This document shows, piece after piece, positions 1,536-63,249 of a DNA stretch of 64,000 bases. A model generated the notes under the pieces. The model was not told the DNA's origin. It worked only from the letters and a program-made list of their open reading frames with translations, and did not search any database. The position numbers were made by a program, and so were the translations under genes. Position 1 is the stretch's first letter. Each line of letters opens with the position of its first letter. The DNA lies in the IMG/VR virus record IMGVR_UViG_3300023049_000005, positions 206,757 through 270,756 of that record. One strand, given 5' to 3'.

Positions 1536-2201
1536 ATGAAGTTAATATTAGAATTCACAGAATTTAATCACCAAAGAATGAATAGTGATTCTGTTCCACA
1601 ATCAACACATGTAGATGATCCACAATTATCTCTTGGTTCATTTAACAGATTTCAATCTAATCTTAAAAATGCAGTTAATAAATTAAACTCTATTTATAAG
1701 AAAATGAGTATTACTACATCAGGTGTTAATCTGACTAGTGGTAAACCTATTGAACAAAATGATATTAAGAACATCAAGATTCTTAGAATATTCCCTAGTG
1801 ATGATATTTACTATAATGTTTATTTCTCTTTCGAATTAGAAGAAAACGAATATTACGGAGTCATTAAAAAAATAAACCATGACCAACCTATATTATCATC
1901 TGAAATTTTTAAAGATGTGACAGTATTTGGATCTAAAGAATGGGTAATTAGAGTGAAGGGTAATTTGGTTAAGACTATAAAAAATTGGCTTAATGTAACT
2001 AAAGGAGAATATTTATCATTAAAAGAGATTGAGGTAATTGATAAATTAACAGGTGAGTTAATACTACTTCCTGAGAAAAGTAAAATAGAAGTTCTTGGTA
2101 CGTTTGACAGTGTGATTAATATTACACATGAAGATAGAGAATATGATCTTAAAAATGGTAATTATTATTACTTCAATTATTACTTCGAGAATTTAAACTA
2201 A
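1536..2201 (+). CDS. Hypothetical virion-associated protein (N-terminal tag MKLILEFTEFN)
   Basis: 221-aa ORF behind late-type promoter, with tag-like N-terminus. Confidence 0.6.
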   Translation: MKLILEFTEFNHQRMNSDSVPQSTHVDDPQLSLGSFNRFQSNLKNAVNKLNSIYKKMSITTSGVNLTSGKPIEQNDIKNIKILRIFPSDDIYYNVYFSFELEENEYYGVIKKINHDQPILSSEIFKDVTVFGSKEWVIRVKGNLVKTIKNWLNVTKGEYLSLKEIEVIDKLTGELILLPEKSKIEVLGTFDSVINITHEDREYDLKNGNYYYFNYYFENLN

Positions 2202-2399
2202 GGAATTTATAAGCTGATCTCTTTTTTCTATAAGAGTATGAAAGTGTTCTTTTTTGTAAACTTCGACTAAACCATTATCAGATACTATTAAGTACCCATT
2301 ATCCATATTAGATAATACATCATACTTCTTACCGATGGTCAAAAATGGATACTCATCATTAATACAGTATATAGGCTGTGTTCTTTCGTTCAAATACAT
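2193..2399 (-). CDS. Small hypothetical protein with C-terminal RDxxIxxL tag; paralog of 3823..4053
   Basis: LTIGKKYDVL..SDNG..Y..HF..EKRDQLINSLV aligns by eye with LTKLKEYDCL..DDYG..Y..RF..EIRDIKINQIL. Confidence 0.65.
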   Translation of the reverse strand: MYLNERTQPIYCINDEYPFLTIGKKYDVLSNMDNGYLIVSDNGLVEVYKKEHFHTLIEKRDQLINSLV

Positions 2400-2402
2400 C
2401 TA

Positions 2403-3308
2403 TTATATATTAAACTCAATTTCTCCATTATCTACTTTTTTCAAGAAATCAGAAACAAAATTGTTGTTAAAATAATCCCAAATATCTACATAATTATCAA
2501 CAGCGAATTCTCTAAAGTATCCCGAACATAGTGTTGTACATATCCGCATCATAGACCATCTTACTGCATCCTTAGGGCTGTAATATTTCTTACCATCAAA
2601 GATGGAAGGTAATACTAAACGTTCCAATGCTATAACATAGGATTCCTCTAAAATACATTTAGCCTTCTCTTCGAATGTAAACTTGTTCCATAGATCTTTT
2701 GAACACCAAACAGAATCTGTATCGGGTTGCATCTTTTCATATAAAGGATTATCATAATGAGCTACCATTCTATGGATATCATCATGTATAAAATAATACT
2801 TAACAAAGCCTTCACTTTGTCCAAAGAATTCTTCCTTAGATTTATTTAAACTAGGTGTCTTTAATTTACCTAATCTATCCTTTGTTTCTTCTTTGTTTAT
2901 CTTAGTGATCTTCTTTAATTTATCTATACCATTAAGTTCTTTATGTAAAAAACAATAGTCTTCTATATGCTTATTGAACTTAATAGGATAATAGATATGA
3001 GCCTTTTTAAGACTATATAAAATCTCTTTTGATCCAATTACTGTTTTACAGAAATGGTTGTCATATATATTATATAACAAAGTGAGAGCTTTCGAAGAAT
3101 CGGTTATTAAGAACTCAACCATACTTCTATCAAAATTATCATTCTTTTCGATATCGAAAAAAGTTATAAGATGACCCCTATCAACTATTTTAGAGGGGGT
3201 TAATATTTTTTTGAAATATTCTACTTCTTCTAAGTTAGCGATTAAGTCTATATCAAAATAACTTCTATCTCGATAATTAGAAAGTGCTTTAGATCCTACT
3301 AGTATCAT
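2403..3308 (-). CDS. Putative nucleotidyltransferase (Pol-beta superfamily-like)
   Basis: N-terminal hGS-x(10)-DxD signature (ILVGSKAL...FDIDL) and a downstream HDDIH motif. Confidence 0.55.
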   Translation of the reverse strand: MILVGSKALSNYRDRSYFDIDLIANLEEVEYFKKILTPSKIVDRGHLITFFDIEKNDNFDRSMVEFLITDSSKALTLLYNIYDNHFCKTVIGSKEILYSLKKAHIYYPIKFNKHIEDYCFLHKELNGIDKLKKITKINKEETKDRLGKLKTPSLNKSKEEFFGQSEGFVKYYFIHDDIHRMVAHYDNPLYEKMQPDTDSVWCSKDLWNKFTFEEKAKCILEESYVIALERLVLPSIFDGKKYYSPKDAVRWSMMRICTTLCSGYFREFAVDNYVDIWDYFNNNFVSDFLKKVDNGEIEFNI

Positions 3309-3320
3309 GGTTATAAAATA

Positions 3321-4450: not shown

Positions 4451-4460
4451 TATATAGACT

Positions 4461-5558
4461 ATGGCTCATATAAACAATTTTCAGAAATTTAACGAAAGCA
4501 AGTTTGTAGAAGAACTACCTGAATACTTCTATCTAATATTACGTGCGGGTGATAGAGATAATAGTAATACTAACACTAAACCTTAGGAAACATTAGCTAC
4601 TATGGAAGCTGAGGGATTAGTAGGGATTAGTTCGACTCCTAATATTATATCTAGTTGGATGGACGTAAGACCTATATTAGTTATGATGCCTGCTGAAGAA
4701 ACTATGAGAATAAATAAGATATTCCCTGTCGATTATTACAATCCTGATCAACTTGTGTCTAATGACCTATTTTTATTAAGAAGGTTAACAGATAATTATA
4801 ATAAAGGAAGTAAGGCTGATCTAAAAGACAAGGAAGACGTAGACAGATTTGAAAGATGGGAATATGATTCTACATTAACTAAGATATTCCAAGTTAGAAA
4901 ATTGAGCGTAGGTAAAAAGAAATCGTCTAGATTAGTAGGAACTTGGCACAGAGATAGAACACATTACCAACAAAAATTATTCGAAACATTTGGACACAGT
5001 GCCTTCTATTACAGAATAGGAGACCATATATCTAATGAAATACAACAAAAGAAATTTAAGATAAATAACGTAAACGATTTAGTCAAAGTGATGGGTGAAG
5101 CTATTGTAACTAACAGAGATGAGTTAGAACATATTACTTATGGTACACATAAACAATTCGAGTGGTTCTTTAACTACTTTGATAAATACGGAACAAAAGG
5201 ATTTAAACAAGTTCTTAATTGGATGATTATAGAACTTTCTAGGGTATGGGCAGAAAAAGAAAACGAATGGATTGTGAAGAAAGATAAGTTAAGTAGTAAA
5301 AGGGAATTTAAGATCCCTAACAATTCACACTTGATTATCAAAACTTTCCCTGGTTATGAGGACGAAGAAGCATATGCTGAGTGGAATCAGAAAAGACAAA
5401 AAGCAAATAAAGAAAATAATAGAAGAGATTTGACACAAGGACTTAGAGAAGATTATGCTAAAGAAGCAGTAAAAGATTACCATTTAGATAATATATATGA
5501 TATACACTATGTAGATAATTTACATGAGGGTAAGAAAAAAGTAAATGAAATAAAATGA
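4461..5558 (+). CDS. Putative ADP-ribosyltransferase-like protein with N-terminal tag, interrupted by in-frame TAG at 4584-4586 (readthrough candidate or pseudogene)
   Basis: TAATATATA at 4448-4456, then ATG 4461 MAHINNFQKFNES...YLILRAG...TKP*ETLATMEAE, in frame with ORF 4602..5558. ART-like R (LILRAG), S (GISST) and ExE (EKENEWIV). Confidence 0.55.
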
Positions 5559-9428: not shown

Positions 9429-9691
9429 TCTTCCACAGAAGAGAAATAATAGTCATCAGATCCATAGCAATACCAAACGTCTATACCATTTGCTGTATCT
9501 ACGTAGTCTAAATATGCTATACGCTGTTCTTGACATTCCATTGAGCCCCAATCCAACCCATTAGCTCTATCTATTGCGTCTTGCTGACCATTAGGAGCTT
9601 CATGACCTGATAAGATATCACCAAAGAAACATCTTTCTTTGTAATCATGGTTTTCGGTTATATATTGATCAAATTTTTTAATACGATTCAT
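9425..9691 (-). CDS. Small tagged protein (MNRIKKFDQYITEN)
   Basis: 88 aa with capsid-targeting-like N-terminus. Confidence 0.7.
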   Translation of the reverse strand: MNRIKKFDQYITENHDYKERCFFGDILSGHEAPNGQQDAIDRANGLDWGSMECQEQRIAYLDYVDTANGIDVWYCYGSDDYYFSSVED

Positions 9692-9711: not shown

Positions 9712-11517
9712 TTAACCCATAGGTTTATTAAATTCTTGTACTTTTTTAATTATATCACGATCTTGTTCACTACCTTCACCTGTTAAATATGCTTCTAAGC
9801 TTGTATCAATTGTATATTTTTCTTCTGTGTATACTTCTCTTGGTAGCATTGTATAATAAATAGAATCGCCTTCTTTTCTACTTAACATTAACATCGTTAG
9901 ATCTAAGTTAACAGGATTTAAATGATCTTCTATCATAATCATAGGAGTGTCTTGTTTAGGCATTAAGTATTCTTCCCCATCAACTTCTTTCTTATTCGCT
10001 AAGAAGAAAAAATAGAAATTATCTGATTCCTTTTTAAGTCTACTACTATCTTTTATTAATTGAGATAATAATAAAGATATAGTAATAGTATCCTCACTAT
10101 TTGCGGCTTCTATTAATCTATCCCACCTTTTCTTATCATCAATATACATTTGTCTTAATTTTTCTTTATCCGCTCTTGATGTTGCTATCTTAGTATGAGA
10201 AACTAAAATAGTAGGATCTAAATCAATTAGTTTATAAAGTTCTTCATCAGTCAATTCTACACCATCATATAAACTGTGTTTATTAGTGATCATTTCTAAT
10301 TTTTGAGTAGAAGTAAGTTTAAGTGTTGCTTCTTTATAATATTCCTCTATATTACTTTCTAGTAAATCAGGATAGTTTATGATAGCATATATCTTTTGAT
10401 CCATGTTTAATGATTTAGCAACGGACTCGTGTTTACATACACGAACATCTGTCTTAATTAAATCAGTGATTTCTTCTGCCGTTAGGAAGTCTATATTATC
10501 ATATAGTCTAACTAATCTTGGGTATTTCATTAAGTACTTTTTCTTATCACCATCAGATAGATCGCTAAATAAATCTCCTGCGTATTCACTCATACTTTCA
10601 TTATCGGCTAAATACTTTATCTTTTGATAATCTTCTATTTCATTCCATTTTTTTAGATATTTGAAGTATCCTTCTTTTTCAAGATTACTAGCACTACTAT
10701 CATCCTTATAATGTGCTATATATTTACCATCTTCGTACAAAGTAATACCAACTTGTGATTGTACGCCCTCTTTTGTTAGATCCCAAATAAAGTATTGTAC
10801 CCCTGCCTTTCCACCACGAGTAAGATAACTACTCCAATAGTTATACATACTATCAGATATACACCATTGTTTAGACCCTAAGTTACATGAGCCTTCTTTT
10901 GAGAAAATCATAGCAATTAAATAATCATCTTCATCAAAGTATACTATTTGTGCATCTTGATCTTTTTTAATTTTCTCGAATATATCCTTTATATCTGCGA
11001 AACTTTTTAAGTGACCTGATAAGTAATTGAAAAAATCTTCAACAGGTCTATCCTGATACTTAGCAATCTTTTTTAAGAATACATTATTATAATCTTCGTA
11101 ATCATAATCTATAATAGCATCTCTGAATCTGTTAAAGTGTTTTTTATTGGATTTCAATTTTTGTCTAAGCGGATTTGGTATCTTTTTTAAATATTTATTT
11201 GTCTTTTCGATTAGATCTACTTCTGCTAATATATCAATAACATCTTCAAACTTCTCTGCTTCTGTTACATCTATATTAAACTGTTTGAACGTGTTTTTAT
11301 GATCAGTCATTTTCTTATATAAATCCTTTAATTCATCGTGATTTATCCCTTCTTCAGAGTGTATATCAAAGAAAAGAGGAATGTATTTTTGTTCCTTTCT
11401 CAAATAATCAAACGCTTTGAGTATTTCTTGGTAAGGTATTTCCCTACCTTCCTTATCTTTATATTCTCTTTTACTTTCGAAAATAAATTGTTCTAATGTT
11501 ATTATCCACTTTGCCAT
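9712..11517 (-). CDS. Tagged protein with conserved CxLGSxxWCI module (paralog 1 of 3)
   Basis: SCNLGSKQWCIS...QYFIWD...SQVGIT...AHYKDD; minus-strand TAATATATA at 11552-11560. Confidence 0.75.
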   Translation of the reverse strand: MAKWIITLEQFIFESKREYKDKEGREIPYQEILKAFDYLRKEQKYIPLFFDIHSEEGINHDELKDLYKKMTDHKNTFKQFNIDVTEAEKFEDVIDILAEVDLIEKTNKYLKKIPNPLRQKLKSNKKHFNRFRDAIIDYDYEDYNNVFLKKIAKYQDRPVEDFFNYLSGHLKSFADIKDIFEKIKKDQDAQIVYFDEDDYLIAMIFSKEGSCNLGSKQWCISDSMYNYWSSYLTRGGKAGVQYFIWDLTKEGVQSQVGITLYEDGKYIAHYKDDSSASNLEKEGYFKYLKKWNEIEDYQKIKYLADNESMSEYAGDLFSDLSDGDKKKYLMKYPRLVRLYDNIDFLTAEEITDLIKTDVRVCKHESVAKSLNMDQKIYAIINYPDLLESNIEEYYKEATLKLTSTQKLEMITNKHSLYDGVELTDEELYKLIDLDPTILVSHTKIATSRADKEKLRQMYIDDKKRWDRLIEAANSEDTITISLLLSQLIKDSSRLKKESDNFYFFFLANKKEVDGEEYLMPKQDTPMIMIEDHLNPVNLDLTMLMLSRKEGDSIYYTMLPREVYTEEKYTIDTSLEAYLTGEGSEQDRDIIKKVQEFNKPMG

Positions 11518-15622: not shown

Positions 15623-15672
15623 AAAAAGAGGTCATTTTATTTTTATAAACTATATATAAAAATACTTCCCCC

Positions 15673-16095: not shown

Positions 16096-16099
16096 ATCA

Positions 16100-16117
16100 C
16101 AAATATACGTATATTTG
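16100..16117. promoter_or_regulatory. Back-to-back divergent Bacteroidota -7 elements (18-bp palindrome)
   Basis: CAAATATACGTATATTTG between divergent starts at 16095(-) and 16135(+). Confidence 0.7.
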
Positions 16118-16134
16118 CTTAAAATATTTAATTT

Positions 16135-20887: not shown

Positions 20888-21202
20888 TTATCCTCTAGGG
20901 AATTTATCTTTATATATCCAAGGAAACTCCTTTTTGAGTTCTTCCTTTTCCCTTTCTCTGTATTCGTTTAATTTCTTTTTCACTTCATCGCTATCAGTAG
21001 TATCTAATACTTCAACTACCTCAACATTTTTTACTGATATAGATCTCCAATATGACCCATCTGTTAAATATACCCTAGTATCATTTTTTAACCAATGTGT
21101 AGGAACTGCAAAATGATCATGTATAAATCCTGTTATCGGAATCTTTCTTCTGATGATAGATGTTGATCCACTGAAATTTTCTAATAGTTTAATGTATTTC
21201 AT
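20888..21202 (-). CDS. Small tagged protein (MKYIKLLENFS)
   Basis: Late promoter at 21207-21215. Confidence 0.7.
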   Translation of the reverse strand: MKYIKLLENFSGSTSIIRRKIPITGFIHDHFAVPTHWLKNDTRVYLTDGSYWRSISVKNVEVVEVLDTTDSDEVKKKLNEYREREKEELKKEFPWIYKDKFPRG

Positions 21203-21212
21203 AACTTATATA

Positions 21213-21491
21213 TTAGTGATTAGGGTGTAATTTATAGATTATCTTTTCTAATTCTTCTTGTGTTAAAGCTATAGCCTTAGCTCCTGTTTTTTGTTCAATT
21301 TCATCTACTGTATCATTTACACCATAAATAAAATCTTCTTCATCATCAAATTCATCTCTATGTACTTCTTCTACGCCTACTCTTTTGTCTACATCTGTAA
21401 TTTCTTTACCCAAGTTATATAATACGTAGAATACTTCATTTGATTCTTCATCTGTGTTTTCTGTTATAAATTTATCAAATTTCTTAACCAC
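21213..21491 (-). CDS. Small acidic tagged protein (MVKKFDKFITEN)
   Basis: Bidirectional TAATATATATTA at 21507-21518. Confidence 0.65.
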   Translation of the reverse strand: MVKKFDKFITENTDEESNEVFYVLYNLGKEITDVDKRVGVEEVHRDEFDDEEDFIYGVNDTVDEIEQKTGAKAIALTQEELEKIIYKLHPNH

Positions 21492-43915: not shown

Positions 43916-44182
43916 ATGAAACAAAACATTAAACTATTTGAACAATTTAATATGGAAAATGTTATAAGCCCGATGTTCTTAGAAACATTAAATGATAATG
44001 AGATAAAAGAATATTTCGATGCTGAGAATATAGATGATTTATCTGATTATGGGAGCTTGGGTGTTATAAAAAATTTCCTAAATAAGAAAAGAGGACTAGG
44101 TTCGTTAGGATCATACATAAATGGTATTGAAAATCATTTAATGTCGATTGTATACGATAGATGGTCAAAAAACATAAAATAA
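43916..44182 (+). CDS. Small tagged protein (MKQNIKLFEQFNME)
   Basis: TTATATATA upstream. Confidence 0.7.
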   Translation: MKQNIKLFEQFNMENVISPMFLETLNDNEIKEYFDAENIDDLSDYGSLGVIKNFLNKKRGLGSLGSYINGIENHLMSIVYDRWSKNIK

Positions 44183-44183
44183 G

Positions 44184-45350
44184 ATGAAATTTATTAAACC
44201 TAGAAGTGTTAACGAAAGTAACTCTATGGAATCTATTATACCTGATTCTATATGGGAACTAAATTCTATTTTCCAAAAAGAAGGACATAAGTTATATGTC
44301 GTTGGTGGAGCAGTAAGAGACTTTCTTAATAATGAAAAACCAAAGGATTTTGATCTAGCTACAGACGCAGAACCACAGAAGGTAATTGATATGTTGAAAC
44401 CTCATTTTAAAGTTAAGGATGAGGTACAAGGTGTTGACTTTGCTGTTGTGGTAGTTTACACAGAAGACGAACCCGATGGAATGGAGATTGCTACTTTCCG
44501 TGAAGACGTATACGGAGATAAACTTGGTAAGACAAGAAATCCTGTTATTAAATTTACGACTATTGAAAAGGACGTGGAAAGACGTGACTTAACCTTCAAT
44601 GGTCTGTTCTTCGATCTAGAAAAGAAAGAAATAATTGACTTAGTAGGTGGACAGAAAGATCTAGAAAATAAGATTACTAGATTTGTAGGTAAACCCGCAG
44701 ATAGAATAATTGAAGATCCACTTCGTATATTAAGACTATTAAGGTTTACTACTAGGTACAACTTTACTATTGAAGAAAAAACTGCTAATGCTATTAAAGA
44801 AAATGGTCACACACTTTCTATTATCACTAAGGAGAGAATTTGGGATAGTAAAAATGGTGAAGTTGTTAAAGCCTTCAAGCAAGCGAAAGACTTTCAGGAT
44901 TACGTAAACTACGTAACGGCTTTTGCGTTATGGGATAATATACTTCCTAATCTTGAAATTAATTCTGAATTAAAGAGCCAAATCAACTTACCTATTGTTG
45001 TTGTTCAATTAGTAAAAGGTAATAGTATTAAGAGTGTTCAGAAGAACCTCACTAAAAGTAAACTATCTACTGATTTAATTAATCAAGTAGTTTTTATGTT
45101 GAAACTATTAGATTTCAATAAAGAAGATATACTTAAATTCCATAGCGATAAAGTAAGGTCTAAGACGGCTGATGATACTATTGAAGAATGGATCAAGATC
45201 AATGGTCTAAAAGGTGATGTTTTAAAGTTCACTAAATTCGTTCCTACTGTTAGTGGAGAAGAAGTGATGAAAAAATTTGATATGAAACCTAGTAGAGAAT
45301 TAGGCGATAAGATCAAGGAGTTGGAAGTTATTAATTTCGAAGCTCTTTAA
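44184..45350 (+). CDS. cca: CCA-adding tRNA nucleotidyltransferase (class II)
   Basis: VGGAVRD, KDFDLAT, EIATFR, RRDLTFN, EDPLRILRLLRF, ERIW; N-terminal extension MKFIKPRSVNES. Confidence 0.9.
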   Translation: MKFIKPRSVNESNSMESIIPDSIWELNSIFQKEGHKLYVVGGAVRDFLNNEKPKDFDLATDAEPQKVIDMLKPHFKVKDEVQGVDFAVVVVYTEDEPDGMEIATFREDVYGDKLGKTRNPVIKFTTIEKDVERRDLTFNGLFFDLEKKEIIDLVGGQKDLENKITRFVGKPADRIIEDPLRILRLLRFTTRYNFTIEEKTANAIKENGHTLSIITKERIWDSKNGEVVKAFKQAKDFQDYVNYVTAFALWDNILPNLEINSELKSQINLPIVVVQLVKGNSIKSVQKNLTKSKLSTDLINQVVFMLKLLDFNKEDILKFHSDKVRSKTADDTIEEWIKINGLKGDVLKFTKFVPTVSGEEVMKKFDMKPSRELGDKIKELEVINFEAL

Positions 45351-49842: not shown

Positions 49843-49885
49843 TTAAGGTATATATATTTTGTTTTATATATTAAATATATAAGCT

Positions 49886-50380
49886 ATGAAACACATCTTA
49901 GAATACAATTCTTTTAGTGATAACCAAGTAATATTAGACTTTATTAAACATAGTTTACAAGAAGGAGAAGAAACCTTTAAGGCAATGAAAGAAGCCTTAG
50001 AAGACGATTCAATATCATTTAACGTCAAGTTTTCTCTATTTGATATAGACTATATTGATCCTAAGAATTATAAAGGTGAAGATTTTGATGAAGAAGAAAA
50101 AGAAATATTTAAAAAAGAATTTAAAGGAGTGAAGTATATTTCATATTTTAGGTTCAGAGAATATGGAATGGGGACACAGGAAGAGATTGATAATTTTTAT
50201 TATTATGAGAATGGAGCATTTAAAGATATCGTTGGTGATGCTCACTCTTACTTACGTTATTTACTAGATGATTTAGATTACACTTTCCAAGAAGGTCTTG
50301 AAATAAAAATGGTTACTTATGACAATTGGTTAGAGTATACTGCTAAGACCGCAGATATGATCAAAACGCTTAACCAATAA
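49886..50380 (+). CDS. Tagged protein (MKHILEYNSF...MIKTLNQ family)
   Basis: Same termini as the 5555 and 6082 proteins. Confidence 0.7.
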   Translation: MKHILEYNSFSDNQVILDFIKHSLQEGEETFKAMKEALEDDSISFNVKFSLFDIDYIDPKNYKGEDFDEEEKEIFKKEFKGVKYISYFRFREYGMGTQEEIDNFYYYENGAFKDIVGDAHSYLRYLLDDLDYTFQEGLEIKMVTYDNWLEYTAKTADMIKTLNQ

Positions 50381-50407: not shown

Positions 50408-51466
50408 ATGTTTACTATTATGAAGATAAGAAAATTCAATGAAAAAGTGGTTGTACCCAATGCTGATAAGTTCAATATTATATCAGAAGTTAAGGATAAA
50501 TTTAAAAAAGGAGAGATCAAAGATCTACAAGAATTGAATGAGTTAACTGTTCCTCAGGGGTTTAAATTTATAAAACACTCAGAGTTCTCTGAACTAATGA
50601 AAGATGTTAAAGACGTAGCAGAAACAATGCCGAAGAAAGGCGATAGACAAATGATACCTCATGTTCTTTGGTTTATGATAATGAATAAGAAAACAAATTT
50701 GATTAATATTGTACTTGATGATAATTTCGACAATAACTTTAAATTGCACATGAATAAGTTATTAGATTTTCCTGTTTTAGTATCTATATTAAAACACGAG
50801 GATATTCATAGACAACAGATTGAAAGAATGGGTGATAGTAAATATTACATAGTAAGAGATCCTAATGACAGGAAAAAATATTTTTCTGATCCAAATGAGA
50901 TAATGGCTTTTGCTTATTCAATAATTGAGGACTTAAAAAACGATGGGTTTTCAAGAGATGAAATCTTAAATAAACTTAAAGATGGTGATTTATCTTTCTC
51001 TATGGGCAGAATGATGACAGGTGGAAGATCGTCTTTTCACCCAATATATTTTGATTATGTAGAAAATTTAGAAAAAAACAGTAAAGAATTTAAAAAATTA
51101 CAAAAATATATGTACCTTTACACCATTGAATTGTTTGACAAAGACAAGACGGAAAAAAACGTACACGATAAAATTAATTTAAACGACGAAATGAGTAAAA
51201 TTAAGAAATTTGAAGCTTTTGTAGAAAGTGTAACAGTGGCTAACCAACCACAAACAGCACCTACAAAACCAGGTGTGAAGCCTGCTGACCCTGGGACGAA
51301 GCCACAAAAGCCTAACCCAAGAAGAAGAATTAAACCAAGTGTTGACCCAAGACCAAAAGCAGAAGCAGAAGATCTTATCAATAACCTTATTGATAAATTT
51401 GATGACGAAGCTACAACTAGTGTTAAAAAAGAAATAATAGAATATTATGGCAAAAAGAATAGATAG
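50408..51466 (+). CDS. Zincin-like metallopeptidase fused to a second tagged Pro-rich peptide
   Basis: LKHEDIHRQQ...YFSDPNEIMAFA; internal MSKIKKFEAFVES at 51191, then PTKPGVKPADPGTKP; late promoter at 50389-50397. Confidence 0.65.
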   Translation: MFTIMKIRKFNEKVVVPNADKFNIISEVKDKFKKGEIKDLQELNELTVPQGFKFIKHSEFSELMKDVKDVAETMPKKGDRQMIPHVLWFMIMNKKTNLINIVLDDNFDNNFKLHMNKLLDFPVLVSILKHEDIHRQQIERMGDSKYYIVRDPNDRKKYFSDPNEIMAFAYSIIEDLKNDGFSRDEILNKLKDGDLSFSMGRMMTGGRSSFHPIYFDYVENLEKNSKEFKKLQKYMYLYTIELFDKDKTEKNVHDKINLNDEMSKIKKFEAFVESVTVANQPQTAPTKPGVKPADPGTKPQKPNPRRRIKPSVDPRPKAEAEDLINNLIDKFDDEATTSVKKEIIEYYGKKNR

Positions 51467-53084
51467 TTTTAAAGTATTTGAAGCAAGTTTAAATGATGAC
51501 ACTAAATTAGGGTCATGGTATTTAGATGACGTAAAAAGAAGAGGTGAGGAAGAATCACAAGAGAAAATGAGACAAGGATATAATCCTATGCAAATTCCTG
51601 ATCTTTTACCAAGGCTGATGCAAATCCAAGGTGCTGACTTTAACCCAAGAACAAGAGAACTTACTTGGATCAACGAAGAAAGAAAAGAAGAATTAGAACA
51701 ACTTACTGAAAGGATCATAAGAACAGAATTCGGTTCTGTTATTAATACTTTAGGTGTGGAACTAGACTTAAAATTAGTTGGCAATAAAGAAGAATTAGAA
51801 GACGCTGCTAAGGAAATGGAAAGCGAAGCTGAGGAACTACCTGAGGAAGAAGAGGAAGAAAAAGAAGATCAGGAAGAAAAAGAAGAAGAAGAAGAAGAGG
51901 AAGAAAAAGAAGAACCTAGTGAAAGACTTCTTAATGAAGTAGAGAAAAGAAAGTTGATCAACAACATTACACAAGGTTCAGCTAAAAACACACATAGATT
52001 GATCGCATTATATAAAAATGATATAGATGACATCGATCCACGTTTATATGATATTATGGAGCGTCTTATTAAGTCGCAAGAAACCATGGAATGGGACCCG
52101 AATAATCCGTTGAACAATATGTCTGATAGAGAAAAGGGAGATATTATTAAAAATAATATGAACGGATTTGCTGATATCGATTTTGGTGATGATGAAACAG
52201 ATGATGGTAGAGATTACGATGCCTCTGCAGGTGCTTTATCGGATATGAATGACGAAGAAGATGGTGGGGGTTCAGAAGGAGAAGAACAAACACAAGCTGA
52301 AGAATATGCAGCAAGAAACCCTAAGTTAATCGCTAGGGCTTTTGATATCGTAGTATTATTACACGAATCTGTTAAGGCTATATATGAAATGATCGCTACA
52401 TCAGGTATTGTAGAAGATGAAGAAATGGCAAGAGCCGTTATGAATTACACAGATACTGTATCAGATGAATTCGAAGATCTTAAATATGGTGTTTATATCA
52501 GACAAGATTTAATTGCATTCATATCACAAAATGATAAAATCGATGATATCGAAAATGGTTTTGAGTATGTTTGGATGAAGATGGTGGATATACCTGCGAA
52601 ACAATTTGTTAAACTATTCAAATACATCTTAATTGATACTTATCATGAAGATAGATTAGAAGTTGATGTATATCATTCTTATGACCAAGCTGACATCACT
52701 CTTACAGGAACACCAATGGAAATTATTGATGGTATTGTTAATCTTATTGAAGAAGAAAACAAAACATACCAAGAAGAACTAGCTCGTTGGGAAGAACAAA
52801 ACAGAGAAGCACAAGAATGGGAAAAGGATAAAGGTCGTTACGAAGAATGGAAGGATAAAGCAGAAGACGAAGGAGAACTCGAAGGTGATAAAGAAGACGA
52901 TGAAATTGAGAAATTAATTAAACAAAGTCAAGAAAGGAATCAAGAACCTGAAAAAGATTCTGATGATTTTTCTTCTATGTCTAAGAAAGAAGTACAAGCA
53001 GAGATCGATAGAATCTTCGATGAAGAGGATATCAGTAAACCTGAGGTAAGAAGTCGTTTAGATAAACTTACTAGCCTTGTATAA
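51447..53084 (+). CDS. Highly acidic tagged protein, possibly head core/scaffold-associated
   Basis: MAKRIDSFKVFEAS; poly-Glu tracts; conserved-looking KRKLINNITQG and VLLHESVKAIYE. Confidence 0.55.
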   Translation: MAKRIDSFKVFEASLNDDTKLGSWYLDDVKRRGEEESQEKMRQGYNPMQIPDLLPRLMQIQGADFNPRTRELTWINEERKEELEQLTERIIRTEFGSVINTLGVELDLKLVGNKEELEDAAKEMESEAEELPEEEEEEKEDQEEKEEEEEEEEKEEPSERLLNEVEKRKLINNITQGSAKNTHRLIALYKNDIDDIDPRLYDIMERLIKSQETMEWDPNNPLNNMSDREKGDIIKNNMNGFADIDFGDDETDDGRDYDASAGALSDMNDEEDGGGSEGEEQTQAEEYAARNPKLIARAFDIVVLLHESVKAIYEMIATSGIVEDEEMARAVMNYTDTVSDEFEDLKYGVYIRQDLIAFISQNDKIDDIENGFEYVWMKMVDIPAKQFVKLFKYILIDTYHEDRLEVDVYHSYDQADITLTGTPMEIIDGIVNLIEEENKTYQEELARWEEQNREAQEWEKDKGRYEEWKDKAEDEGELEGDKEDDEIEKLIKQSQERNQEPEKDSDDFSSMSKKEVQAEIDRIFDEEDISKPEVRSRLDKLTSLV

Positions 53085-57182: not shown

Positions 57183-57878
57183 ATGGGAATTAAAAAATGG
57201 AGTAACTTTAATAACGAAGAAACAACAAACGAAAAAATGAAAACATTCACAGGAAAAAATAACGACAAGAGTAAGATGGAAGATCCTAAAAGATCACATG
57301 TATCTGCTTCTTCAGAATATGCTGATGAGATCAATCAGAATATTGTTAAACAAAAAAAGGATGTTAGTTCGAAGCAACCTGATAGGAAATATGCTACTAA
57401 GAAATTAGAGGATACTATCAAAGATGATTCCCTTTATCCACCTAAAACGGAAGACAGAGGCGTAGCTAACCTACAAGAAAACCAAAAAGTGAAATTTTAT
57501 GGTAAACTAGCTAAATTCCCTGACAATGTAAAAGCAGCAAATGCATACAATTGGATGCATAACCTAAAAGATCCTAAATTAGCTAAGAAAGACATTTGGT
57601 ATCTAATGGTAGAGAAGCAGGACAATGAGCTTCAAATGATTAAATATCAACAAAAGCAAGGTGTAAACTTAACTAAGTTCATCTTCGATCTCAAAAAATA
57701 TTACGTAGAAAAATATAAAGACAATAAAACCCTTGTTGAAAATATCTCAAACATTGAATTAGGTGGAGATAAAGAAGGTAACGTATCAACTATTAGAAAC
57801 ATACCTAATGTTACAGTAGAAAATGATACAAAATTAATCCAAAAAATAACAGAAGATTTAGTTAAATTATTGGGTTAA
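57183..57878 (+). CDS. Tagged protein (MGIKKWSNFNNEE)
   Basis: Late promoter at 57153-57161. Confidence 0.7.
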   Translation: MGIKKWSNFNNEETTNEKMKTFTGKNNDKSKMEDPKRSHVSASSEYADEINQNIVKQKKDVSSKQPDRKYATKKLEDTIKDDSLYPPKTEDRGVANLQENQKVKFYGKLAKFPDNVKAANAYNWMHNLKDPKLAKKDIWYLMVEKQDNELQMIKYQQKQGVNLTKFIFDLKKYYVEKYKDNKTLVENISNIELGGDKEGNVSTIRNIPNVTVENDTKLIQKITEDLVKLLG

Positions 57879-57896: not shown

Positions 57897-58286
57897 ATGG
57901 AAAAACGTATTAAAAATTTTAATAACTTTGTGAACGAATCATTTTCGTCTTTGTCTGATGAAGAAAAGTCACATCTACAAATTGTTGTAGATAAATTAAA
58001 AGGCGAAACTGAGGAAAAGATACCTTATAACAGTGAGGTTGCTAATCCAAGAGGGAAAGCTAAAAATCCTTTTTATGATAGAGGATCTAGAAAATTAGAC
58101 GGTCTCGGTAAGCCATTTGCCTCTATTGTGCCTGGTTCAGTTAATAAAAAAGGTGATACAATCACTGCAGAAGTTTCTCACGGGGTTGAGTTTGAAAGTG
58201 GATTAAAAACTGAAAACAAAACACTTGTTGAAATGGACAAGAAAACTTTTGAATACACAACAAAGAAAATAGAAACTAACTTATAA
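57897..58286 (+). CDS. Tagged protein (MEKRIKNFNNFVNES)
   Basis: TTATATATA upstream. Confidence 0.7.
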   Translation: MEKRIKNFNNFVNESFSSLSDEEKSHLQIVVDKLKGETEEKIPYNSEVANPRGKAKNPFYDRGSRKLDGLGKPFASIVPGSVNKKGDTITAEVSHGVEFESGLKTENKTLVEMDKKTFEYTTKKIETNL

Positions 58287-60320: not shown

Positions 60321-60351
60321 TATTTAACAAAAAAAGTTTAATATATAATTT

Positions 60352-60777
60352 ATGAAACATATTAAACTTTTCGAAAACCATAATATCGATAATATTTTAG
60401 ATAAGATATCCGATAAAGGAATCGATTCATTATCTAAAAATGAAATCGACTATTTAGACAGCACTAATAGCCCTAATAAACTATTAAGAGAAAGATTAAA
60501 TAACGTTCGTTTTATACAAGAAAGTGTAATGAAAAACGAAGGGTCACTAGGTATGGGCGAGTTACAGGCAGAAGCTTCTCCTGTTGTTACAGAAGAAAGT
60601 AATGAAATACATCTTGTTGAGATGCTATTTGAAGAAACGTGTGATGTGGTAGTATACGGTGGACACAATCTAGAAACCGTAATGAATGAATACCAATTGA
60701 CATATTCTGAGTTAAGTGATGAAACAATTTCTGAAATTTGTAATATAATCAGAAACAGTTATTACTTCGAGGATTAA
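60352..60777 (+). CDS. Tagged protein (MKHIKLFEN)
   Basis: Late promoter at 60339-60347. Confidence 0.7.
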   Translation: MKHIKLFENHNIDNILDKISDKGIDSLSKNEIDYLDSTNSPNKLLRERLNNVRFIQESVMKNEGSLGMGELQAEASPVVTEESNEIHLVEMLFEETCDVVVYGGHNLETVMNEYQLTYSELSDETISEICNIIRNSYYFED

Positions 60778-60779: not shown

Positions 60780-61835
60780 ATGCAAGGAATACCAAATGAG
60801 ATAGACGATTGGATCGAGTTACTTTATTTTAGAGTAAGGGATTTTATCTATTACCTAAACGAAGTGGGCAAAATAGATCCATTGATAATTGACTACGGAT
60901 CAGAAGAAGTTGAAAGCTATGGTCTAGTATTCACCAACGAAGATTCAATTGGAGCAGATGATATTGATTCTATCTTTAATGGAAAGATAAAGGATCTATA
61001 TCTAGAAATTATAATCAACACATTACCGAATGAGTACAAAGAGAACATCCGTAAAAATTGGAGTGGTTCTTATGATTATACAAATAGTGTGATCAAAGAC
61101 GATGTTATGTTAGGGTCATCTCTTTGTTTCGAATTCTTCTTTCCTGAAGAAATAATAGAAACAAATGATATTGTTACTTATTTAGAAGATAATTATAAAC
61201 ATAAGATCAAGTCTTATATAGCACATGAACTTACCCATATATATGAATTCTATTTAAAGAAGACAAAGGGTTTTGGTGATAACAAAGAAATGATAATGAA
61301 TTACCATAGTATATTAATGGATCAATATCTAACCGAATTGAATATGAGGTCTATGTGTCCTTCTTGGAATACTTTTCTGTATCTAATATACTTATCATCA
61401 GATTTTGAAATCAATGCAAGAGTAGTTCAATTCTTTTATAGTATAGATAAAAAGGGTAAGACATTCAAAGAATATATGGAACTATTTAAAAAGAGTTATA
61501 TATTTGAGGAATTCACTATGTTAAATGATTTTGATACTAAGGGTTGGTATAGAAACTTAGAATATGATAGAGAATTAGTAGATGATTATATCTTAGATCA
61601 AGAGTGGGTAAATGTTGAAATAACAGATGATAATAGGAAAGAGTTATTAATGTTATCATTAGTTAAAGATTGGGATTATATAGCAGAGAAACTAAGTGAT
61701 AAAAAATTAGAGCGATTACCTGATCAATATATCGAAGATCCGTTATTGTTTGTAGAATCTCAAGTTAAGATATTCAATAGATACGGAAAAAAATTAGAGA
61801 AAAAAATAAAGAGATTATACAACAATTACGTATAA
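60780..61835 (+). CDS. Zincin-like metallopeptidase
   Basis: YIAHELTHIYE...YLSSDFEINAR. Confidence 0.65.
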   Translation: MQGIPNEIDDWIELLYFRVRDFIYYLNEVGKIDPLIIDYGSEEVESYGLVFTNEDSIGADDIDSIFNGKIKDLYLEIIINTLPNEYKENIRKNWSGSYDYTNSVIKDDVMLGSSLCFEFFFPEEIIETNDIVTYLEDNYKHKIKSYIAHELTHIYEFYLKKTKGFGDNKEMIMNYHSILMDQYLTELNMRSMCPSWNTFLYLIYLSSDFEINARVVQFFYSIDKKGKTFKEYMELFKKSYIFEEFTMLNDFDTKGWYRNLEYDRELVDDYILDQEWVNVEITDDNRKELLMLSLVKDWDYIAEKLSDKKLERLPDQYIEDPLLFVESQVKIFNRYGKKLEKKIKRLYNNYV

Positions 61836-61851
61836 AATTATATATAGTATA

Positions 61852-62175
61852 ATGAAGAGTGATAAAGACATACCTATTATAGAACTTAATGATGATGAAA
61901 CATATAATAGTTTTATAAAGAATAATAAAACGCATATATACCGACATACTGTAAACGCTTTAGGTAAACTAGTTGATAGTGGCGAAGAAACACAATTAGT
62001 ATTCGTTTTATCGGGTAAATTAATCGATAAAACGAAGGATTTTGTGATCAGTAGGGACAAGATAGATGAGTACTTAGAAAGGTCTTTAAAACACTTAGAA
62101 AAGGTCGAGGAATATGAATACTGCTCTAGAATAGTAGAAATAAGAAAAAAATGGGAAAATAATGAAAAAAATTAA
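61852..62175 (+). CDS. Hypothetical protein with UVR-like C-terminal helix
   Basis: EKVEEYEYCSRIVEI. Confidence 0.55.
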   Translation: MKSDKDIPIIELNDDETYNSFIKNNKTHIYRHTVNALGKLVDSGEETQLVFVLSGKLIDKTKDFVISRDKIDEYLERSLKHLEKVEEYEYCSRIVEIRKKWENNEKN

Positions 62176-62449
62176 GCTATATTACACATATTTGTATCAA
62201 AATATGATAAATGATGAAGAGTGGGGTGATGTTACGTGGATAGGTAAAATTGCTATATTTTTCCCTTGGTTGATAAGATCTATATTAATATTAGTATTAT
62301 CTCCTATCGGATTCCCTATTTATTTACTATGTAATTCTAAACTATATTTTATATTAGAGGAAAAAGCTATATTATTTTATTTAGATATTATGAAAGATTA
62401 TCAGGAGTTCGTACATGAAATGGAGCAACAAGGAAAAAAGAATGTTTAA
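62162..62449 (+). CDS. Small membrane protein
   Basis: Central hydrophobic stretch. Confidence 0.55.
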   Translation: MKKIKLYYTYLYQNMINDEEWGDVTWIGKIAIFFPWLIRSILILVLSPIGFPIYLLCNSKLYFILEEKAILFYLDIMKDYQEFVHEMEQQGKKNV

Positions 62450-63249
62450 GTTAAAACACCATTGTATATATCTCCAAGAACTTCGTTTGGTATAGTAAAT
62501 TGTTTTTTACCATCTTCGCTATAAAGGATTAATAAATCATTATAATAGACTTTCAAATCATATGATCTACCTGTACTTCTATTGAATCTAATGATAGTTA
62601 TTTCTCCGTTTTCGTCATATCGTAACTTAGACGTACTTAAATTTAATACATCAGCATCAATTTTCTCCCCATTCACATAGATATCAAAATCATTTCTTTT
62701 AGAAGTTAAGAACTTATTTAATTTAATTGATTTTTCTTTTTGGTCTTCTAGTTTATTTACATACTCTTTAGATAAATCTTCTAGATCACTACCATGTTCT
62801 TTAATGAACTTTTGCTTTAATTCTCTTTTCTTTTCTTGGTTTTCATCTGATTTTATAAAAGGATAAGATAGTATAATCTTATATCTTTTTTCATTTAGAT
62901 CATAAACTCCTATACTCCACATATCCTCATTTAATTTAGGATCTTCGGTAATAGTTTGGCAATGTTTTCTTCTACCTTTCTTATCTGTGAAATCCCAATG
63001 GTCTGATAACCTTTCTGGTTGATTTGGCTTATATGTCCAACCAACTTTGTGTGAATAATAACTATGGCTATAAGGAGATTTGTGATAATACAATGACCAA
63101 TTTTCTAAAATATGCTCTAGTAACCTATAATCAATTGTATCAGGAATAGTTTCAAATATAGTATTCATCGGTACTCTAGTATCGCCTTTTTTGAAAGACT
63201 TACCTATTGATTTTTTATACTGATTTAAATTTAATATTTTATTCTCCAT
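62446..63249 (-). CDS. Hypothetical protein (KSPYSHSYY / RLSDHW motifs)
   Basis: 267-aa ORF with tag-like start MENKILNLNQY. Confidence 0.6.
   Translation of the reverse strand: MENKILNLNQYKKSIGKSFKKGDTRVPMNTIFETIPDTIDYRLLEHILENWSLYYHKSPYSHSYYSHKVGWTYKPNQPERLSDHWDFTDKKGRRKHCQTITEDPKLNEDMWSIGVYDLNEKRYKIILSYPFIKSDENQEKKRELKQKFIKEHGSDLEDLSKEYVNKLEDQKEKSIKLNKFLTSKRNDFDIYVNGEKIDADVLNLSTSKLRYDENGEITIIRFNRSTGRSYDLKVYYNDLLILYSEDGKKQFTIPNEVLGDIYNGVLT

What the first reader, a model, noticed from the sequence alone, without database searches (positions are those of the whole stretch)
1536..63249. Window-wide N-terminal capsid-targeting-like tag on about 20 unrelated late proteins: a candidate packaged-effector delivery system
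SEEN: many otherwise unrelated ORFs start with M-x(0-3)-[IV]-[KR]-x-[FY]-x-x-[FY]-x(1-2)-E or close variants. Examples: 1536 MKLILEFTEF; 4461 MAHINNFQKFNES; 5555; 6082; 9691(-) MNRIKKFDQYITEN; 11517(-) IITLEQFIFES; 13497(-); 21202(-) MKYIKLLENF; 21491(-) MVKKFDKFITEN; 38560; 39014 MRFVKKYDKFLES; 43372(-); 43916 MKQNIKLFEQFNME; 44184; 49886; 50408; 51447; 57183; 57897 MEKRIKNFNNFVNES; 60352 MKHIKLFEN. Most sit directly behind (T/A)AATATATA or in its operon. KNOWN: T4 internal proteins use a roughly 10-aa N-terminal capsid-targeting sequence (IPIII MKTYQEFIAE) that the gp21 prohead protease removes after Glu, and T4 packages the ADP-ribosyltransferase Alt for injection. INFERENCE: this phage has expanded that signal into a modular address label loading a large cargo into the head for injection at infection. 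The cargo includes ART-like, ParB-like, zincin, CCA-adding and Cys-rich proteins.
Basis: partly seen in the sequence, partly recalled or inferred. Interest (0 to 1): 0.88.

Follow-up and report, generated by a model that had tools for sequence, protein, structure and literature searches.

The report
Expanded T4-like capsid-targeting tag
About a quarter of the genes in this piece of a huge uncultivated phage begin with the same ~11-residue peptide, which closely matches the tag phage T4 uses to load proteins into its head; these giant phages may therefore pre-pack a very large set of proteins for injection, but packaging has not been tested.

Summary
The window is the last 64 kb of a 270-kb IMG/VR contig. 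Its nearest relatives are the 635-735 kb 'Mahaphage' genomes predicted to infect Bacteroidetes. About 19-22 of its 80 genes start with M-x(0-3)-[IVL]-K-x-[FYW]-x-x-[FY]-[ILV]-x-E-[SN] or a shorter dialect, MK[YH][IL]Kx[FY]..E; about 0.3 would be expected by chance.

A complete relative, LR745206.1, carries the tag on about 150 of 933 ORFs (1.5 expected). These fall into 137 BLAST-unrelated clusters.

- Selection acts on the peptide: synonymous codon use in the tag equals the genome-wide use.
- The signal ends after about 11 residues.
- The tag is gained or lost as a clean 9-10-residue unit between orthologs.
- AlphaFold2 models it as a disordered appendage.
- It is followed by hydrophobic-x-Glu but not hydrophobic-x-Asp.
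- Tagged genes are enriched behind the promoter box used by structural genes.

The conserved columns coincide with the mapped determinants of the T4 IPIII capsid-targeting sequence: residues 4 and 7 for targeting, 8 and 10 for cleavage. The clade has a Gp23-type capsid protein and a gp21-type protease.

Packaging, cleavage and injection are untested, and most of the claimed cargo identities are not reproducible.

The parts
4461..4499 (+). Tag MAHINNFQKFNES, 4 nt after a TAATATATA box (4448-4456). The ORF is interrupted by an in-frame TAG at 4584-4586.
   Evidence: leave-one-out score 8.7 bits
5555..5593 (+). Tag MKYIREYNS.. (dialect A), at an operon-internal gene.
   Evidence: 18.9 bits with the matrix trained on LR745206.1
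6082..6120 (+). Tag MRYIKEYNSYIEN.
   Evidence: (15.5 bits leave-one-out)
9650..9691 (-). Tag MNRIKKFDQYITEN on an 88-aa protein.
   Evidence: (16.4 bits leave-one-out)
11473..11517 (-). Tag MAKWIITLEQFIFES on a 601-aa protein. Residues ~80-280 are paralogous to ORFs 23359 and 49842(-).
21164..21202 (-). Tag MKYIKLLENFSGS; the promoter box ends 4 nt before the ATG.
21456..21491 (-). Tag (GTG start) MVKKFDKFITEN, the closest match to the T4 IPIII capsid-targeting sequence (KxFxxFIxE).
   Evidence: (18.6 bits leave-one-out)
38560..38610 (+). Tag MKRTINNFENWVTINEE, followed by a Gly/Ala-rich linker.
39014..39052 (+). Tag MRFVKKYDKFLES.
43331..43372 (-). Tag MKYLSNLNKFSKEN (dialect A); the box ends 4 nt before the ATG.
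   Evidence: (14.9 bits)
43916..43957 (+). Tag MKQNIKLFEQFNME on an 88-aa protein.
   Evidence: (17.3 bits leave-one-out)
44184..44219 (+). Degenerate tag MKFIKPRSVNES on the CCA-adding enzyme (the PolyA_pol domain starts at residue 37). The LR745206.1 orthologue starts MILKKYKMFLES.
49886..49924 (+). Tag MKHILEYNSFSDN; the box ends 4 nt before the ATG.
50420..50446 (+). Short tag MKIRKFNEK, starting at Met5 of ORF 50408-51466 (a protein with an HEDIH motif).
51191..51229 (+). Tag MSKIKKFEAFVES at an in-frame internal Met of ORF 50408-51466. It corresponds to a separate 84-aa tagged gene in LR745206.1.
   Evidence: (18.1 bits)
51447..51488 (+). Weak tag MAKRIDSFKVFEAS on a 545-aa protein; the LR745206.1 orthologue starts MKNFKDFMNEE.
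57183..57221 (+). Tag MGIKKWSNFNNEE on a 231-aa protein next to the baseplate-wedge (gp6-like) gene.
57897..57941 (+). Tag MEKRIKNFNNFVNES; the box ends 4 nt before the ATG.
   Evidence: (14.3 bits leave-one-out)
60352..60378 (+). Short tag MKHIKLFEN (dialect A), followed by a DUF6576-like helix.
   Evidence: (23.1 bits)
1536..1565 (+). Weak, tag-like N-terminus MKLILEFTEF. It is conserved in the LR745206.1 orthologue behind 5 extra residues. Membership is uncertain.
   Evidence: 6.7 bits
13459..13497 (-). Weak, tag-like N-terminus MKNKRIYEYSGFS. Membership is uncertain.
   Evidence: 5.1 bits
60339..60347 (+). Example of the late-promoter-like box TAATATATA. Others: + strand 1523, 4057, 4448, 21507, 22392, 27062, 38544, 50389, 53607, 54396, 57153; - strand 2404, 4060, 19997, 21207, 21510, 43377, 49865.

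Best explanation
The shared N-terminus is a homologue or close analogue of the phage T4 capsid-targeting sequence (CTS). It is a detachable address peptide of about 11 residues.

Inferred mechanism: the [IVL]-K and the two aromatic residues spaced three apart dock the newly made late protein onto the scaffolding core of the assembling prohead. The hydrophobic-x-Glu at the end of the tag is then cut by a gp21-type (Peptidase S77) prohead protease. This frees the mature protein inside the head, to be ejected with the DNA at the next infection.

In this clade of huge Bacteroidetes phages the label has spread to roughly 15-25% of all genes. Most of these are small, acidic, fast-evolving proteins without known relatives. 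A few are recognisable RNA or nucleotide enzymes: a CCA-adding enzyme, a 2H-phosphoesterase/Acb1-like domain fused to RNase T, a Nudix hydrolase, and an NFACT-R domain protein.

Shown here: the reality of the motif, its N-terminal position, its modularity, selection at the peptide level, its Glu-specific end, its link to late-type promoters, its match to the T4 determinants, and T4-type head genes in relatives. Inferred: docking to the core, cleavage, packaging and injection.
For: 1. Enrichment. Window: 14 of 81 N-termini above 8 bits in leave-one-out scoring against about 0.3 expected. LR745206.1 with the window-derived matrix: 32 of 933 against 2.6 expected. After retraining: 150 against 1.5. 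In 80 capsid-gene loci of the clade: 130 of 1729 against 2.5. Controls: other T4-like loci 4 of 1254; T4 3 of 260; no hits in a 50-kb sample of Lak-C1 at 25% GC.

2. Match to T4. The window matrix ranks ipIII (12.2 bits) and ipII (8.5 bits) first and second among 260 T4 ORFs. In that alignment T4 Y4, F7, I8 and E10 fall on the conserved aromatic, aromatic, Ile and Glu columns. PMC9026906 reports residues 4 and 7 as targeting determinants and 8 and 10 as processing determinants, and that Asp at position 10 blocks processing.

3. Glu-specific end. When tags are defined only by their first 7 columns, hydrophobic-x-E follows in 120 of 156 tagged proteins against 143 of 626 controls (p = 7e-36). 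Hydrophobic-x-D is not enriched (30/156 against 117/626).

4. Discrete module.
- Information content drops to background after about 11 residues.
- In the orthologues of an NFACT-R family that were read, the tag varies in length and dialect but the tagged members end ...E just before the conserved [SG]KKDKFP; a few members have other N-termini.
- In another family, members with MKHLRKFEEL ahead of DYSTY... sit beside orthologues that start M[NK]YSTY....
- In an AlphaFold2 model, residues 1-12 have pLDDT below 50 while the domain is above 90.
- The 151 tagged LR745206.1 proteins form 137 BLAST clusters.

5. Peptide-level selection. Synonymous codon use at conserved tag positions equals the genome-wide use.

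6. Late expression. The AATATATA box lies within 40 nt upstream of 57 of 138 tagged genes against 94 of 743 untagged genes (p = 8e-14). It also precedes the capsid, portal, protease, tube, sheath and terminase genes. In the window, p = 0.003.

7. T4-type head machinery in the clade.
- Gp23-family capsid protein (Pfam 1.8e-26) whose N-terminal propeptide aligns with that of T4.
- T4-like portal, terminase, sheath and tube.
- A ~707-aa protein directly upstream of the capsid gene whose N-terminal profile hits only gp21 in the T4 proteome (E = 2.5e-4). It keeps GE[LF][ND]HP and VSSR[GA] at the same 55-residue spacing as in T4 gp21.

8. Distribution. None of the conserved T4-core replication or structural homologues is tagged. 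One of two Nudix paralogues is.
Against: - There is no proteomic or experimental evidence of packaging or cleavage for any member, and the clade is uncultivated.
- The protease, scaffold and capsid genes were found in relatives (LR745206.1 and 80 IMG/VR loci), not in the window or the reachable part of its own contig.
- The protease assignment rests on weak sequence scores (Pfam S77 E = 0.005, below the curated cut-off), two motifs and gene order. The AlphaFold2 model was unusable and a profile search of the PDB did not reach gp21.
- About 150 different cargo proteins is well beyond any known phage: T4 has about 6 CTS proteins, and SPN3US has about 50 head proteins.
- Tagged proteins are acidic (median net charge -0.044 per residue against -0.018), whereas to my knowledge (not checked here) T4 IPII and IPIII are basic.
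- Some tagged genes lie in tail or baseplate neighbourhoods (57183).
- The tag is most frequent on genes whose promoter box almost touches the ATG (44% against 11%), so some link to leaderless expression cannot be excluded.
- The match to T4 is about 10 residues long, so convergence cannot be told from homology.
Confidence: 0.6

Rival explanations
1. The tag is a recognition peptide for a different late process, not head loading. Examples: docking to a phage chaperone or assembly factory, timed activation or destruction by a Glu-specific protease in the cytoplasm, or sorting to another virion part such as the tail or baseplate.
For: Some tagged genes sit in baseplate neighbourhoods (57183 next to the gp6-like gene). 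The number and acidity of tagged proteins are unlike the T4 internal proteins. Nothing here shows location in the head.
Against: The conserved columns coincide with those that T4 genetics ties to head targeting and gp21 processing. The clade has T4-type head assembly genes. No alternative receptor is known.
Confidence: 0.2
2. The tagged proteins are mainly expendable prohead-core 'filler' or scaffold material, like the acidic T4 gp22, gp67 and gp68. They would be targeted by the same tag but then degraded and expelled, rather than delivered as effectors.
For: Tagged proteins are markedly acidic and most have no recognisable domain. A very large capsid needs a very large core. In T4 the core proteins are also cut at (L/I)xE sites (PMC5694885).
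Against: Several tagged proteins are folded enzymes with intact domains: PolyA_pol 1e-29; 2H phosphoesterase plus RNase T; NFACT-R modelled at pLDDT 90. The tagged proteins fall into 137 unrelated clusters and turn over rapidly, which is unlike structural scaffolds.
Confidence: 0.1
3. The shared N-terminus is a by-product of translation initiation. Many late mRNAs appear leaderless, so the first ~30 nt of coding sequence, or the first residues of the nascent chain, would be selected for efficient initiation in a host without Shine-Dalgarno pairing.
For: The promoter box ends 4 nt before the ATG at many tagged genes. In LR745206.1, 44% of such genes are tagged against 11% of genes without a box.
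Against: Synonymous codon use at tag positions equals genome-wide use. 77 of 151 tagged genes have no box within 60 nt, and 60 of 108 leaderless-type genes are untagged. The most abundant structural proteins (capsid, sheath, tube, portal) lack the tag. The preference for Glu over Asp and the W/F/Y interchange are features of the protein, not the DNA. The AT-rich Lak-C1 sample has none.
Confidence: 0.04
4. All tagged proteins belong to one large, rapidly diverging paralogous family, and the 'tag' is simply its best-conserved first helix.
For: Tagged genes often lie in tandem arrays. Small BLAST clusters exist.
Against: There are 137 clusters, 128 of them singletons, with lengths from 54 to 1284 aa. 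The tag sits on unrelated Pfam families. It is present or absent as a clean unit between orthologues and lies outside the folded domain. Information content is at background beyond residue ~11.
Confidence: 0.03

Closest known systems
Capsid-targeting sequence (CTS) of phage T4 internal proteins IPI, IPII and IPIII (and the N-terminal propeptides of Alt, gp67 and gp68), removed by the gp21 prohead protease
   Same: An N-terminal peptide of about 10 residues on otherwise unrelated proteins. Lys at position 2, aromatic residues three apart, then Ile-x-Glu. The window-derived matrix picks ipIII and ipII as the top T4 hits. The phage lineage has Gp23-type capsid and gp21-type protease genes. The cargo genes are variable and accessory, as at the T-even internal-protein loci (PMC3012670; PMC9026906).
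   Different: Scale: about 20 genes in 64 kb and about 150 per 635-kb genome, against a handful in T4. The tag usually has 1-4 extra residues before the T4-equivalent position 1. It comes in at least two interchangeable dialects of 8-13 residues. The cargo is mostly acidic, not basic. Hosts are predicted Bacteroidetes. Function is untested.
N-terminal propeptides of head and ejection proteins in phiKZ-like giant phages (phiKZ, 201phi2-1, SPN3US), cut by a gp21-related protease at S/A/G-x-E
   Same: A giant phage with many internal head proteins processed after Glu by a T4-related prohead protease. The propeptides are thought to target proteins into the prohead (PMC5694885; PMC9026906).
   Different: Those propeptides are mostly over 100 residues, differ from protein to protein, and have small residues at P3. 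Here there is one short shared label with a hydrophobic P3. About 8-20 proteins are processed there, against about 150 candidates here.
Packaged anti-defence proteins of other phages (for example the P1 Dar system, or T4 IPI* acting against GmrSD)
   Same: The idea of pre-loading counter-defence proteins into the head for co-injection (PMC3012670). One tagged protein in LR745206.1 carries a 2H/Acb1-like phosphoesterase domain.
   Different: No shared short address tag is known for P1 Dar proteins. No anti-defence activity has been shown for any protein here.

Membership tests
T4-type capsid-targeting sequence (CTS) | Located at the extreme N-terminus and about 10-20 residues long | tested here: met
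   15 of 21 six-frame hits lie at ORF starts, plus one at an internal Met. Information content reaches background after about 11 residues.
T4-type capsid-targeting sequence (CTS) | Targeting determinants equivalent to IPIII residues 4 and 7 (two aromatic residues three apart) | tested here: met
   Columns 3 and 6 of the window matrix are F/Y/W and F/Y. T4 Y4 and F7 align to them. The determinants are taken from PMC9026906.
T4-type capsid-targeting sequence (CTS) | Processing site (I/L)-x-E at the C-terminal end of the tag, with Glu required and Asp not accepted | tested here: met
   Hydrophobic-x-E follows in 120/156 tagged proteins against 143/626 controls (p = 7e-36); hydrophobic-x-D is not enriched. 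The tagged NFACT-R orthologues keep E just before [SG]KK. This tests sequence only, not cleavage.
T4-type capsid-targeting sequence (CTS) | Carried by otherwise unrelated proteins (a modular label) | tested here: met
   137 BLAST clusters among 151 tagged proteins. Presence or absence differs between orthologues. The tag is disordered and outside the fold.
T4-type capsid-targeting sequence (CTS) | The same phage encodes a gp21-type (Peptidase S77) prohead protease and a scaffolding core | tested here: inconclusive
   Found in relatives: Pfam S77 E = 0.005 (below cut-off); reciprocal profile hit to T4 gp21, E = 2.5e-4; GE[LF][ND]HP and VSSR[GA] motifs at equal spacing; position directly upstream of the Gp23-type capsid gene in 80 of 80 loci. 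Not found in the window. The structure model failed, and there was no PDB sequence hit.
T4-type capsid-targeting sequence (CTS) | Late expression together with head genes | tested here: met
   Promoter-box association: p = 8e-14 in LR745206.1 and p = 0.003 in the window. The same box precedes the structural genes. This is inferred from sequence, not from transcripts.
T4-type capsid-targeting sequence (CTS) | Tagged proteins are physically inside the head, lack the tag there, and are ejected into the host | not testable with these tools
   The clade is uncultivated and no proteomic data were available.
Mahaphage clade of huge phages (Al-Shayeb et al. 2020) | Closest relatives by conserved genes are the 634-735 kb genomes predicted to infect Bacteroidetes | tested here: met
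   DNA polymerase fragment 56% and 53% identical to LR745206.1 and LR756502.1. Baseplate gp6-like protein 51% identical. Clade description in PMC7162821. No tree was built.

The most novel reading that the evidence does not exclude
The largest known phages use a T4-derived address tag to load on the order of a hundred or more different proteins, a sixth to a quarter of their coding repertoire, into the capsid. Each infection would then begin with a pre-made, rapidly evolving 'starter proteome' of counter-defence and RNA/tRNA-repair enzymes. The tag alone would let one read the injected effector set of any such genome directly from metagenomic sequence.
Probability: 0.4. Interest if true: 0.9.

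Novelty: new variant of a known kind. Interest (0 to 1): 0.75.

Why it matters
If the tag works as in T4, it gives a sequence-only way to list the packaged and injected proteins of uncultivated huge phages. That list would hold hundreds of candidate anti-defence and host-takeover proteins of unknown function.

It would also help explain what huge phages do with their extra genes and capsid volume. And it would extend a classic T4 mechanism, already used to package foreign proteins, to a far larger scale and to Bacteroidetes phages.

The prediction can be tested directly by N-terminal proteomics of viral fractions, or by swapping the tag into T4.

Tried and rejected
- Megablast of 23 kb of the window against 50,697 phage records found nothing. 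Relatives were reached only at the protein level.
- Pfam and PHROGs on all tagged window proteins gave almost nothing: CCA-adding enzyme, DUF6576, and one PHROG of unknown function.
- Pfam on the 20 longest tagged LR745206.1 proteins gave only a 2H/Acb1-like plus RNase T protein and a GH108 lysozyme.
- AlphaFold2 of the putative protease domain gave pLDDT 48.6 and was not used for a fold search.
- A profile of that domain against PDB sequences gave no gp21 hit at E <= 1.
- A homologue search for the protein encoded at 60352 gave only 3 hits.
- I tested whether the basic, aromatic 'N-terminal extensions' reported for huge-phage S21 proteins (PMC7162821) are this tag. The S21-like ORF of LR745206.1 is untagged and unextended.
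- I could not retrieve the head module of the window's own contig. The capsid-gene scan returned 80 other contigs.
- Stop-codon reassignment as the cause of the in-frame TAG at 4584 is unlikely, because TAG ends 6 of the 80 genes.

Full report
**Where the window comes from.** The window is the last 64 kb of IMG/VR contig IMGVR_UViG_3300023049_000005, which is 270,756 bp long; window position 1 is contig position 206,757. It is 29% G+C and uses the standard genetic code, with stops TAA 65, TGA 9 and TAG 6. It has no tRNA genes and no close DNA relative among 50,697 phage records. At the protein level its DNA-polymerase fragment is 56% and 53% identical to the 634,780-bp and 642,428-bp uncultured genomes LR745206.1 and LR756502.1. 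More distant matches are the 636-kb and 735-kb genomes and the Lak phages. These are the 'Mahaphage' clade, whose largest members are predicted to infect Bacteroidetes (PMC7162821). I called 80 non-overlapping ORFs in the window.

The core [ILV][KRILN]x[FYLW]xx[FYW] begins within the first 7 residues of 17 of 80 proteins, where the internal rate predicts 0.8.
- A leave-one-out position matrix gives 14 of 81 N-termini above 8 bits. Internal blocks predict 0.27. N-termini whose own residues were shuffled average 0.36, with a maximum of 4.
- In a six-frame scan, 15 of 21 hits lie directly after an ORF's start Met. A sixteenth follows an in-frame internal Met at 51191.
- By BLAST the tagged proteins are unrelated, apart from one three-member domain family and one weak pair.
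- With matrices for both dialects, 19 of 80 genes exceed 10 bits.
One heads an ORF broken by a TAG (4461). One starts at Met5 (50408).

**The tag is a property of the clade, at very large scale.** I fetched all of LR745206.1 in 13 pieces.
- The matrix built from the window alone marks 32 of its 933 ORFs, against 2.6 expected.
- After retraining, about 150 ORFs score above 8 bits against 1.5 expected.
- Two dialects appear: MK[YH][LI]Kx[FY](N or KIF)ES, and M(I)IKK[FWY]xxF[IL]xE[SN].
- In 80 IMG/VR loci centred on the clade's capsid gene, 130 of 1729 ORFs are tagged against 2.5 expected.
- Samples of LR756504 and LR756501 also carry tags.
- Controls: 77 loci of other T4-like phages give 4 of 1254; T4 gives 3 of 260; 50 kb of Lak-C1 (25% G+C) gives none; 50 kb of Flavobacterium phage MaF61 gives one doubtful hit. 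AT-rich composition therefore does not explain the motif.

**What kind of element is it?** It is a peptide, not a DNA signal. At the conserved positions the synonymous codon ratios equal the genome-wide ratios, for example Lys AAA 72-74% against 74%. It is also short and discrete:
- Information content falls to background after about 11 residues.
- After the tag is removed, 151 tagged proteins form 137 BLAST clusters, 128 of them singletons. Lengths run from 54 to 1284 aa.
- The tag sits on unrelated Pfam families, ahead of the first domain residue. In the window this is the CCA-adding enzyme (PolyA_pol 1.1e-29, domain starting at residue 37). In LR745206.1 it is a 2H/Acb1-like phosphoesterase fused to RNase T, an NFACT-R protein, a GH108 lysozyme, and one of two Nudix paralogues.
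- Orthologues keep the tag while changing dialect (window 44184 and LR 516201; 51447 and 251044).
- In the NFACT-R family encoded next to the capsid gene, the tag varies from 8 to 13 residues, but in the tagged members read it ends in Glu just before the conserved [SG]KKDKFP; a few members have other N-termini.
- In another family, members with MKHLRKFEEL ahead of DYSTY... sit beside orthologues that start M[NK]YSTY.... This is a clean presence or absence of the unit.
- An AlphaFold2 model of the NFACT-R protein (mean pLDDT 89.7) leaves residues 1-12 unstructured, at pLDDT below 50.

**Comparison with T4.** I fetched the T4 genome record.
- The window-derived matrix ranks ipIII (12.2 bits) and ipII (8.5 bits) first and second among 260 T4 ORFs. 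The alignment places T4 M1, K2, Y4, F7, I8 and E10 on the tag's [IV], K, aromatic, aromatic, Ile and Glu columns.
- Published T4 genetics assigns capsid targeting mainly to residues 4 and 7 and processing to residues 8 and 10. Asp at position 10 blocks cleavage (PMC9026906).
- As a non-circular test, I defined tags only by their first 7 columns. The next residues then contain hydrophobic-x-Glu in 120 of 156 tagged proteins against 143 of 626 controls (p = 7e-36). Hydrophobic-x-Asp is not enriched.
- T4 reviews already describe the internal proteins as diverse defence proteins that share only the CTS (PMC3012670).

**Head machinery and timing.**
- LR745206.1 has T4-like portal, large terminase, sheath and tube genes. 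It has a Gp23-family capsid protein (1.8e-26) whose N-terminal propeptide aligns with that of T4 gp23 and contains a conserved ...HSINE-N... site.
- Directly upstream of the capsid gene, in all 80 loci, lies a ~707-aa protein. It has a weak Pfam Peptidase_S77 match (E = 0.005). A profile of its N-terminal domain hits only gp21 in the T4 proteome (E = 2.5e-4). It shares GE[LF][ND]HP and VSSR[GA] with T4 gp21 at the same 55-residue spacing. From my own knowledge, not checked in a paper here, these are the gp21 His85 and Ser140 motifs.
- The AATATATA box precedes the capsid, portal, protease, tube, sheath and terminase genes. It is absent from most replication genes.
- The box lies within 40 nt upstream of 57 of 138 tagged genes against 94 of 743 untagged genes (p = 8e-14). 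In the window the figures are 13 of 19 against 18 of 61 (p = 0.003).
- None of the conserved T4-core homologues carries the tag.

**Most likely mechanism.** The tag is a T4-type capsid-targeting sequence. Late-made cargo docks through the Lys and aromatic face onto the prohead core. The gp21-type protease then cuts after the Glu. The mature protein stays in the head and enters the next host with the DNA. I put this at about 0.6. The sequence-level steps are shown; docking, cleavage, packaging and injection are inferred.

**Points against.**
- There is no direct evidence of packaging or cleavage.
- The head genes were seen only in relatives.
- The protease assignment is weak. The AlphaFold2 model had pLDDT 48.6, and there was no PDB hit.
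- The number of cargo proteins would be unprecedented.
- Tagged proteins are acidic.
- One tagged gene lies in a baseplate neighbourhood.
- The tag is most frequent on genes whose promoter box nearly touches the ATG (44% against 11%).

**Rivals.**
- A recognition peptide for another late process (0.2).
- Expendable acidic core filler, targeted by the same tag but degraded (0.1).
- A by-product of leaderless translation (0.04). Codon use, the many tagged genes without a box, the untagged abundant structural proteins, and the Glu-over-Asp preference all argue against it.
- One diverged paralogous family (0.03). Clustering, the clean gain and loss of the tag, and the structure model argue against it.

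**Novelty.** The CTS principle is known, as are its variable cargo in T-even phages and the long propeptides of phiKZ-like phages. In the searched library, none of the top-ranked huge-phage or megaphage papers mentions a capsid-targeting sequence. I rate this a new variant of a known kind: the same label, carried by about 20 genes in this window and about 150 in a complete relative.

CCA-adding is confirmed, 'zincin' rests on an HEDIH motif, and the ART-like and ParB-like labels have no support.

Noticed in passing
window 4461-5558 (+), TAG at 4584-4586: A tag-bearing ORF behind a late box is interrupted by one in-frame TAG and continues in the same frame for 318 more codons. TAG is an ordinary stop elsewhere (6 of 80 genes), and the window has no tRNA gene. 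It could be a pseudogene, an assembly error or readthrough.
   Followed up: partly
window 50408-51466 (+), internal Met at 51191: An ORF with an HEDIH motif runs in frame into a second complete tag (MSKIKKFEAFVES). In LR745206.1 the downstream part is a separate 84-aa tagged gene (252558-252812). This is either a gene fusion or a nested start. If the tag is a cleavage site, a fusion would be cut into two proteins.
   Followed up: partly
window, e.g. 21207-21215(-), 43377-43385(-), 49873-49881, 60339-60347: The late-promoter-like box TAATATATA ends only 4 nt before the ATG at many genes, which implies leaderless or near-leaderless late mRNAs. Structural genes in LR745206.1 have the box about 20-45 nt upstream. 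In LR745206.1, 44% of genes with a box within 7 nt of the ATG are tagged.
   Followed up: partly
T4 record NC_000866 18966-19130 (-), gene 61.1 (locus L096): The 54-aa T4 hypothetical protein gp61.1 begins MKTFKEFIKED, very like the IPI-III capsid-targeting sequences. I did not check whether this has been noted before.
   Followed up: no
window 9712-11517(-), 23359-25788(+), 45805-49842(-): Three large proteins (601, 809 and 1345 aa) share a domain of about 200 residues near the N-terminus, with no Pfam or PHROG match. Only the smallest has a clear tag. All three have a late-type box upstream: 4-6 nt from the ATG for 23359 and 49842(-), and 34 nt for 11517(-).
   Followed up: partly
window 27089-36661 (+): A single 3190-aa ORF behind a late box. 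Its C-terminal part resembles a 987-aa protein of LR745206.1. It is probably a giant virion or fibre protein.
   Followed up: no
window 17719-19152 (+): The DNA-polymerase gene covers only the C-terminal half of a family-B polymerase (PHROG 262 positions 488-840). The same holds in LR745206.1, so the polymerase appears to be split.
   Followed up: no
window 15623-16134, between divergent genes 15673(-) and 16135(+): A near-perfect palindrome CAAATATACGTATATTTG lies in the shared upstream region. It could be an operator or a bidirectional promoter element, and it differs from the late box.
   Followed up: no
LR745206.1 195382-196860 (locus L085 48382-49860, -): An RNB plus S1 (RNase II/R-like) gene sits between the portal and capsid genes (Pfam 2.9e-112). 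A ~626-aa gene at the equivalent position is conserved in about 59 of the 80 related loci; it was not checked for these domains. This is an unusual occupant of a head module.
   Followed up: no
LR745206.1 448257-449573 (locus L091 7257-8573, -): A tagged 438-aa protein combines a 2H phosphoesterase / Acb1-like domain with an RNase T exonuclease. It is a candidate packaged degrader of cyclic-nucleotide signals or an RNA-repair enzyme.
   Followed up: no
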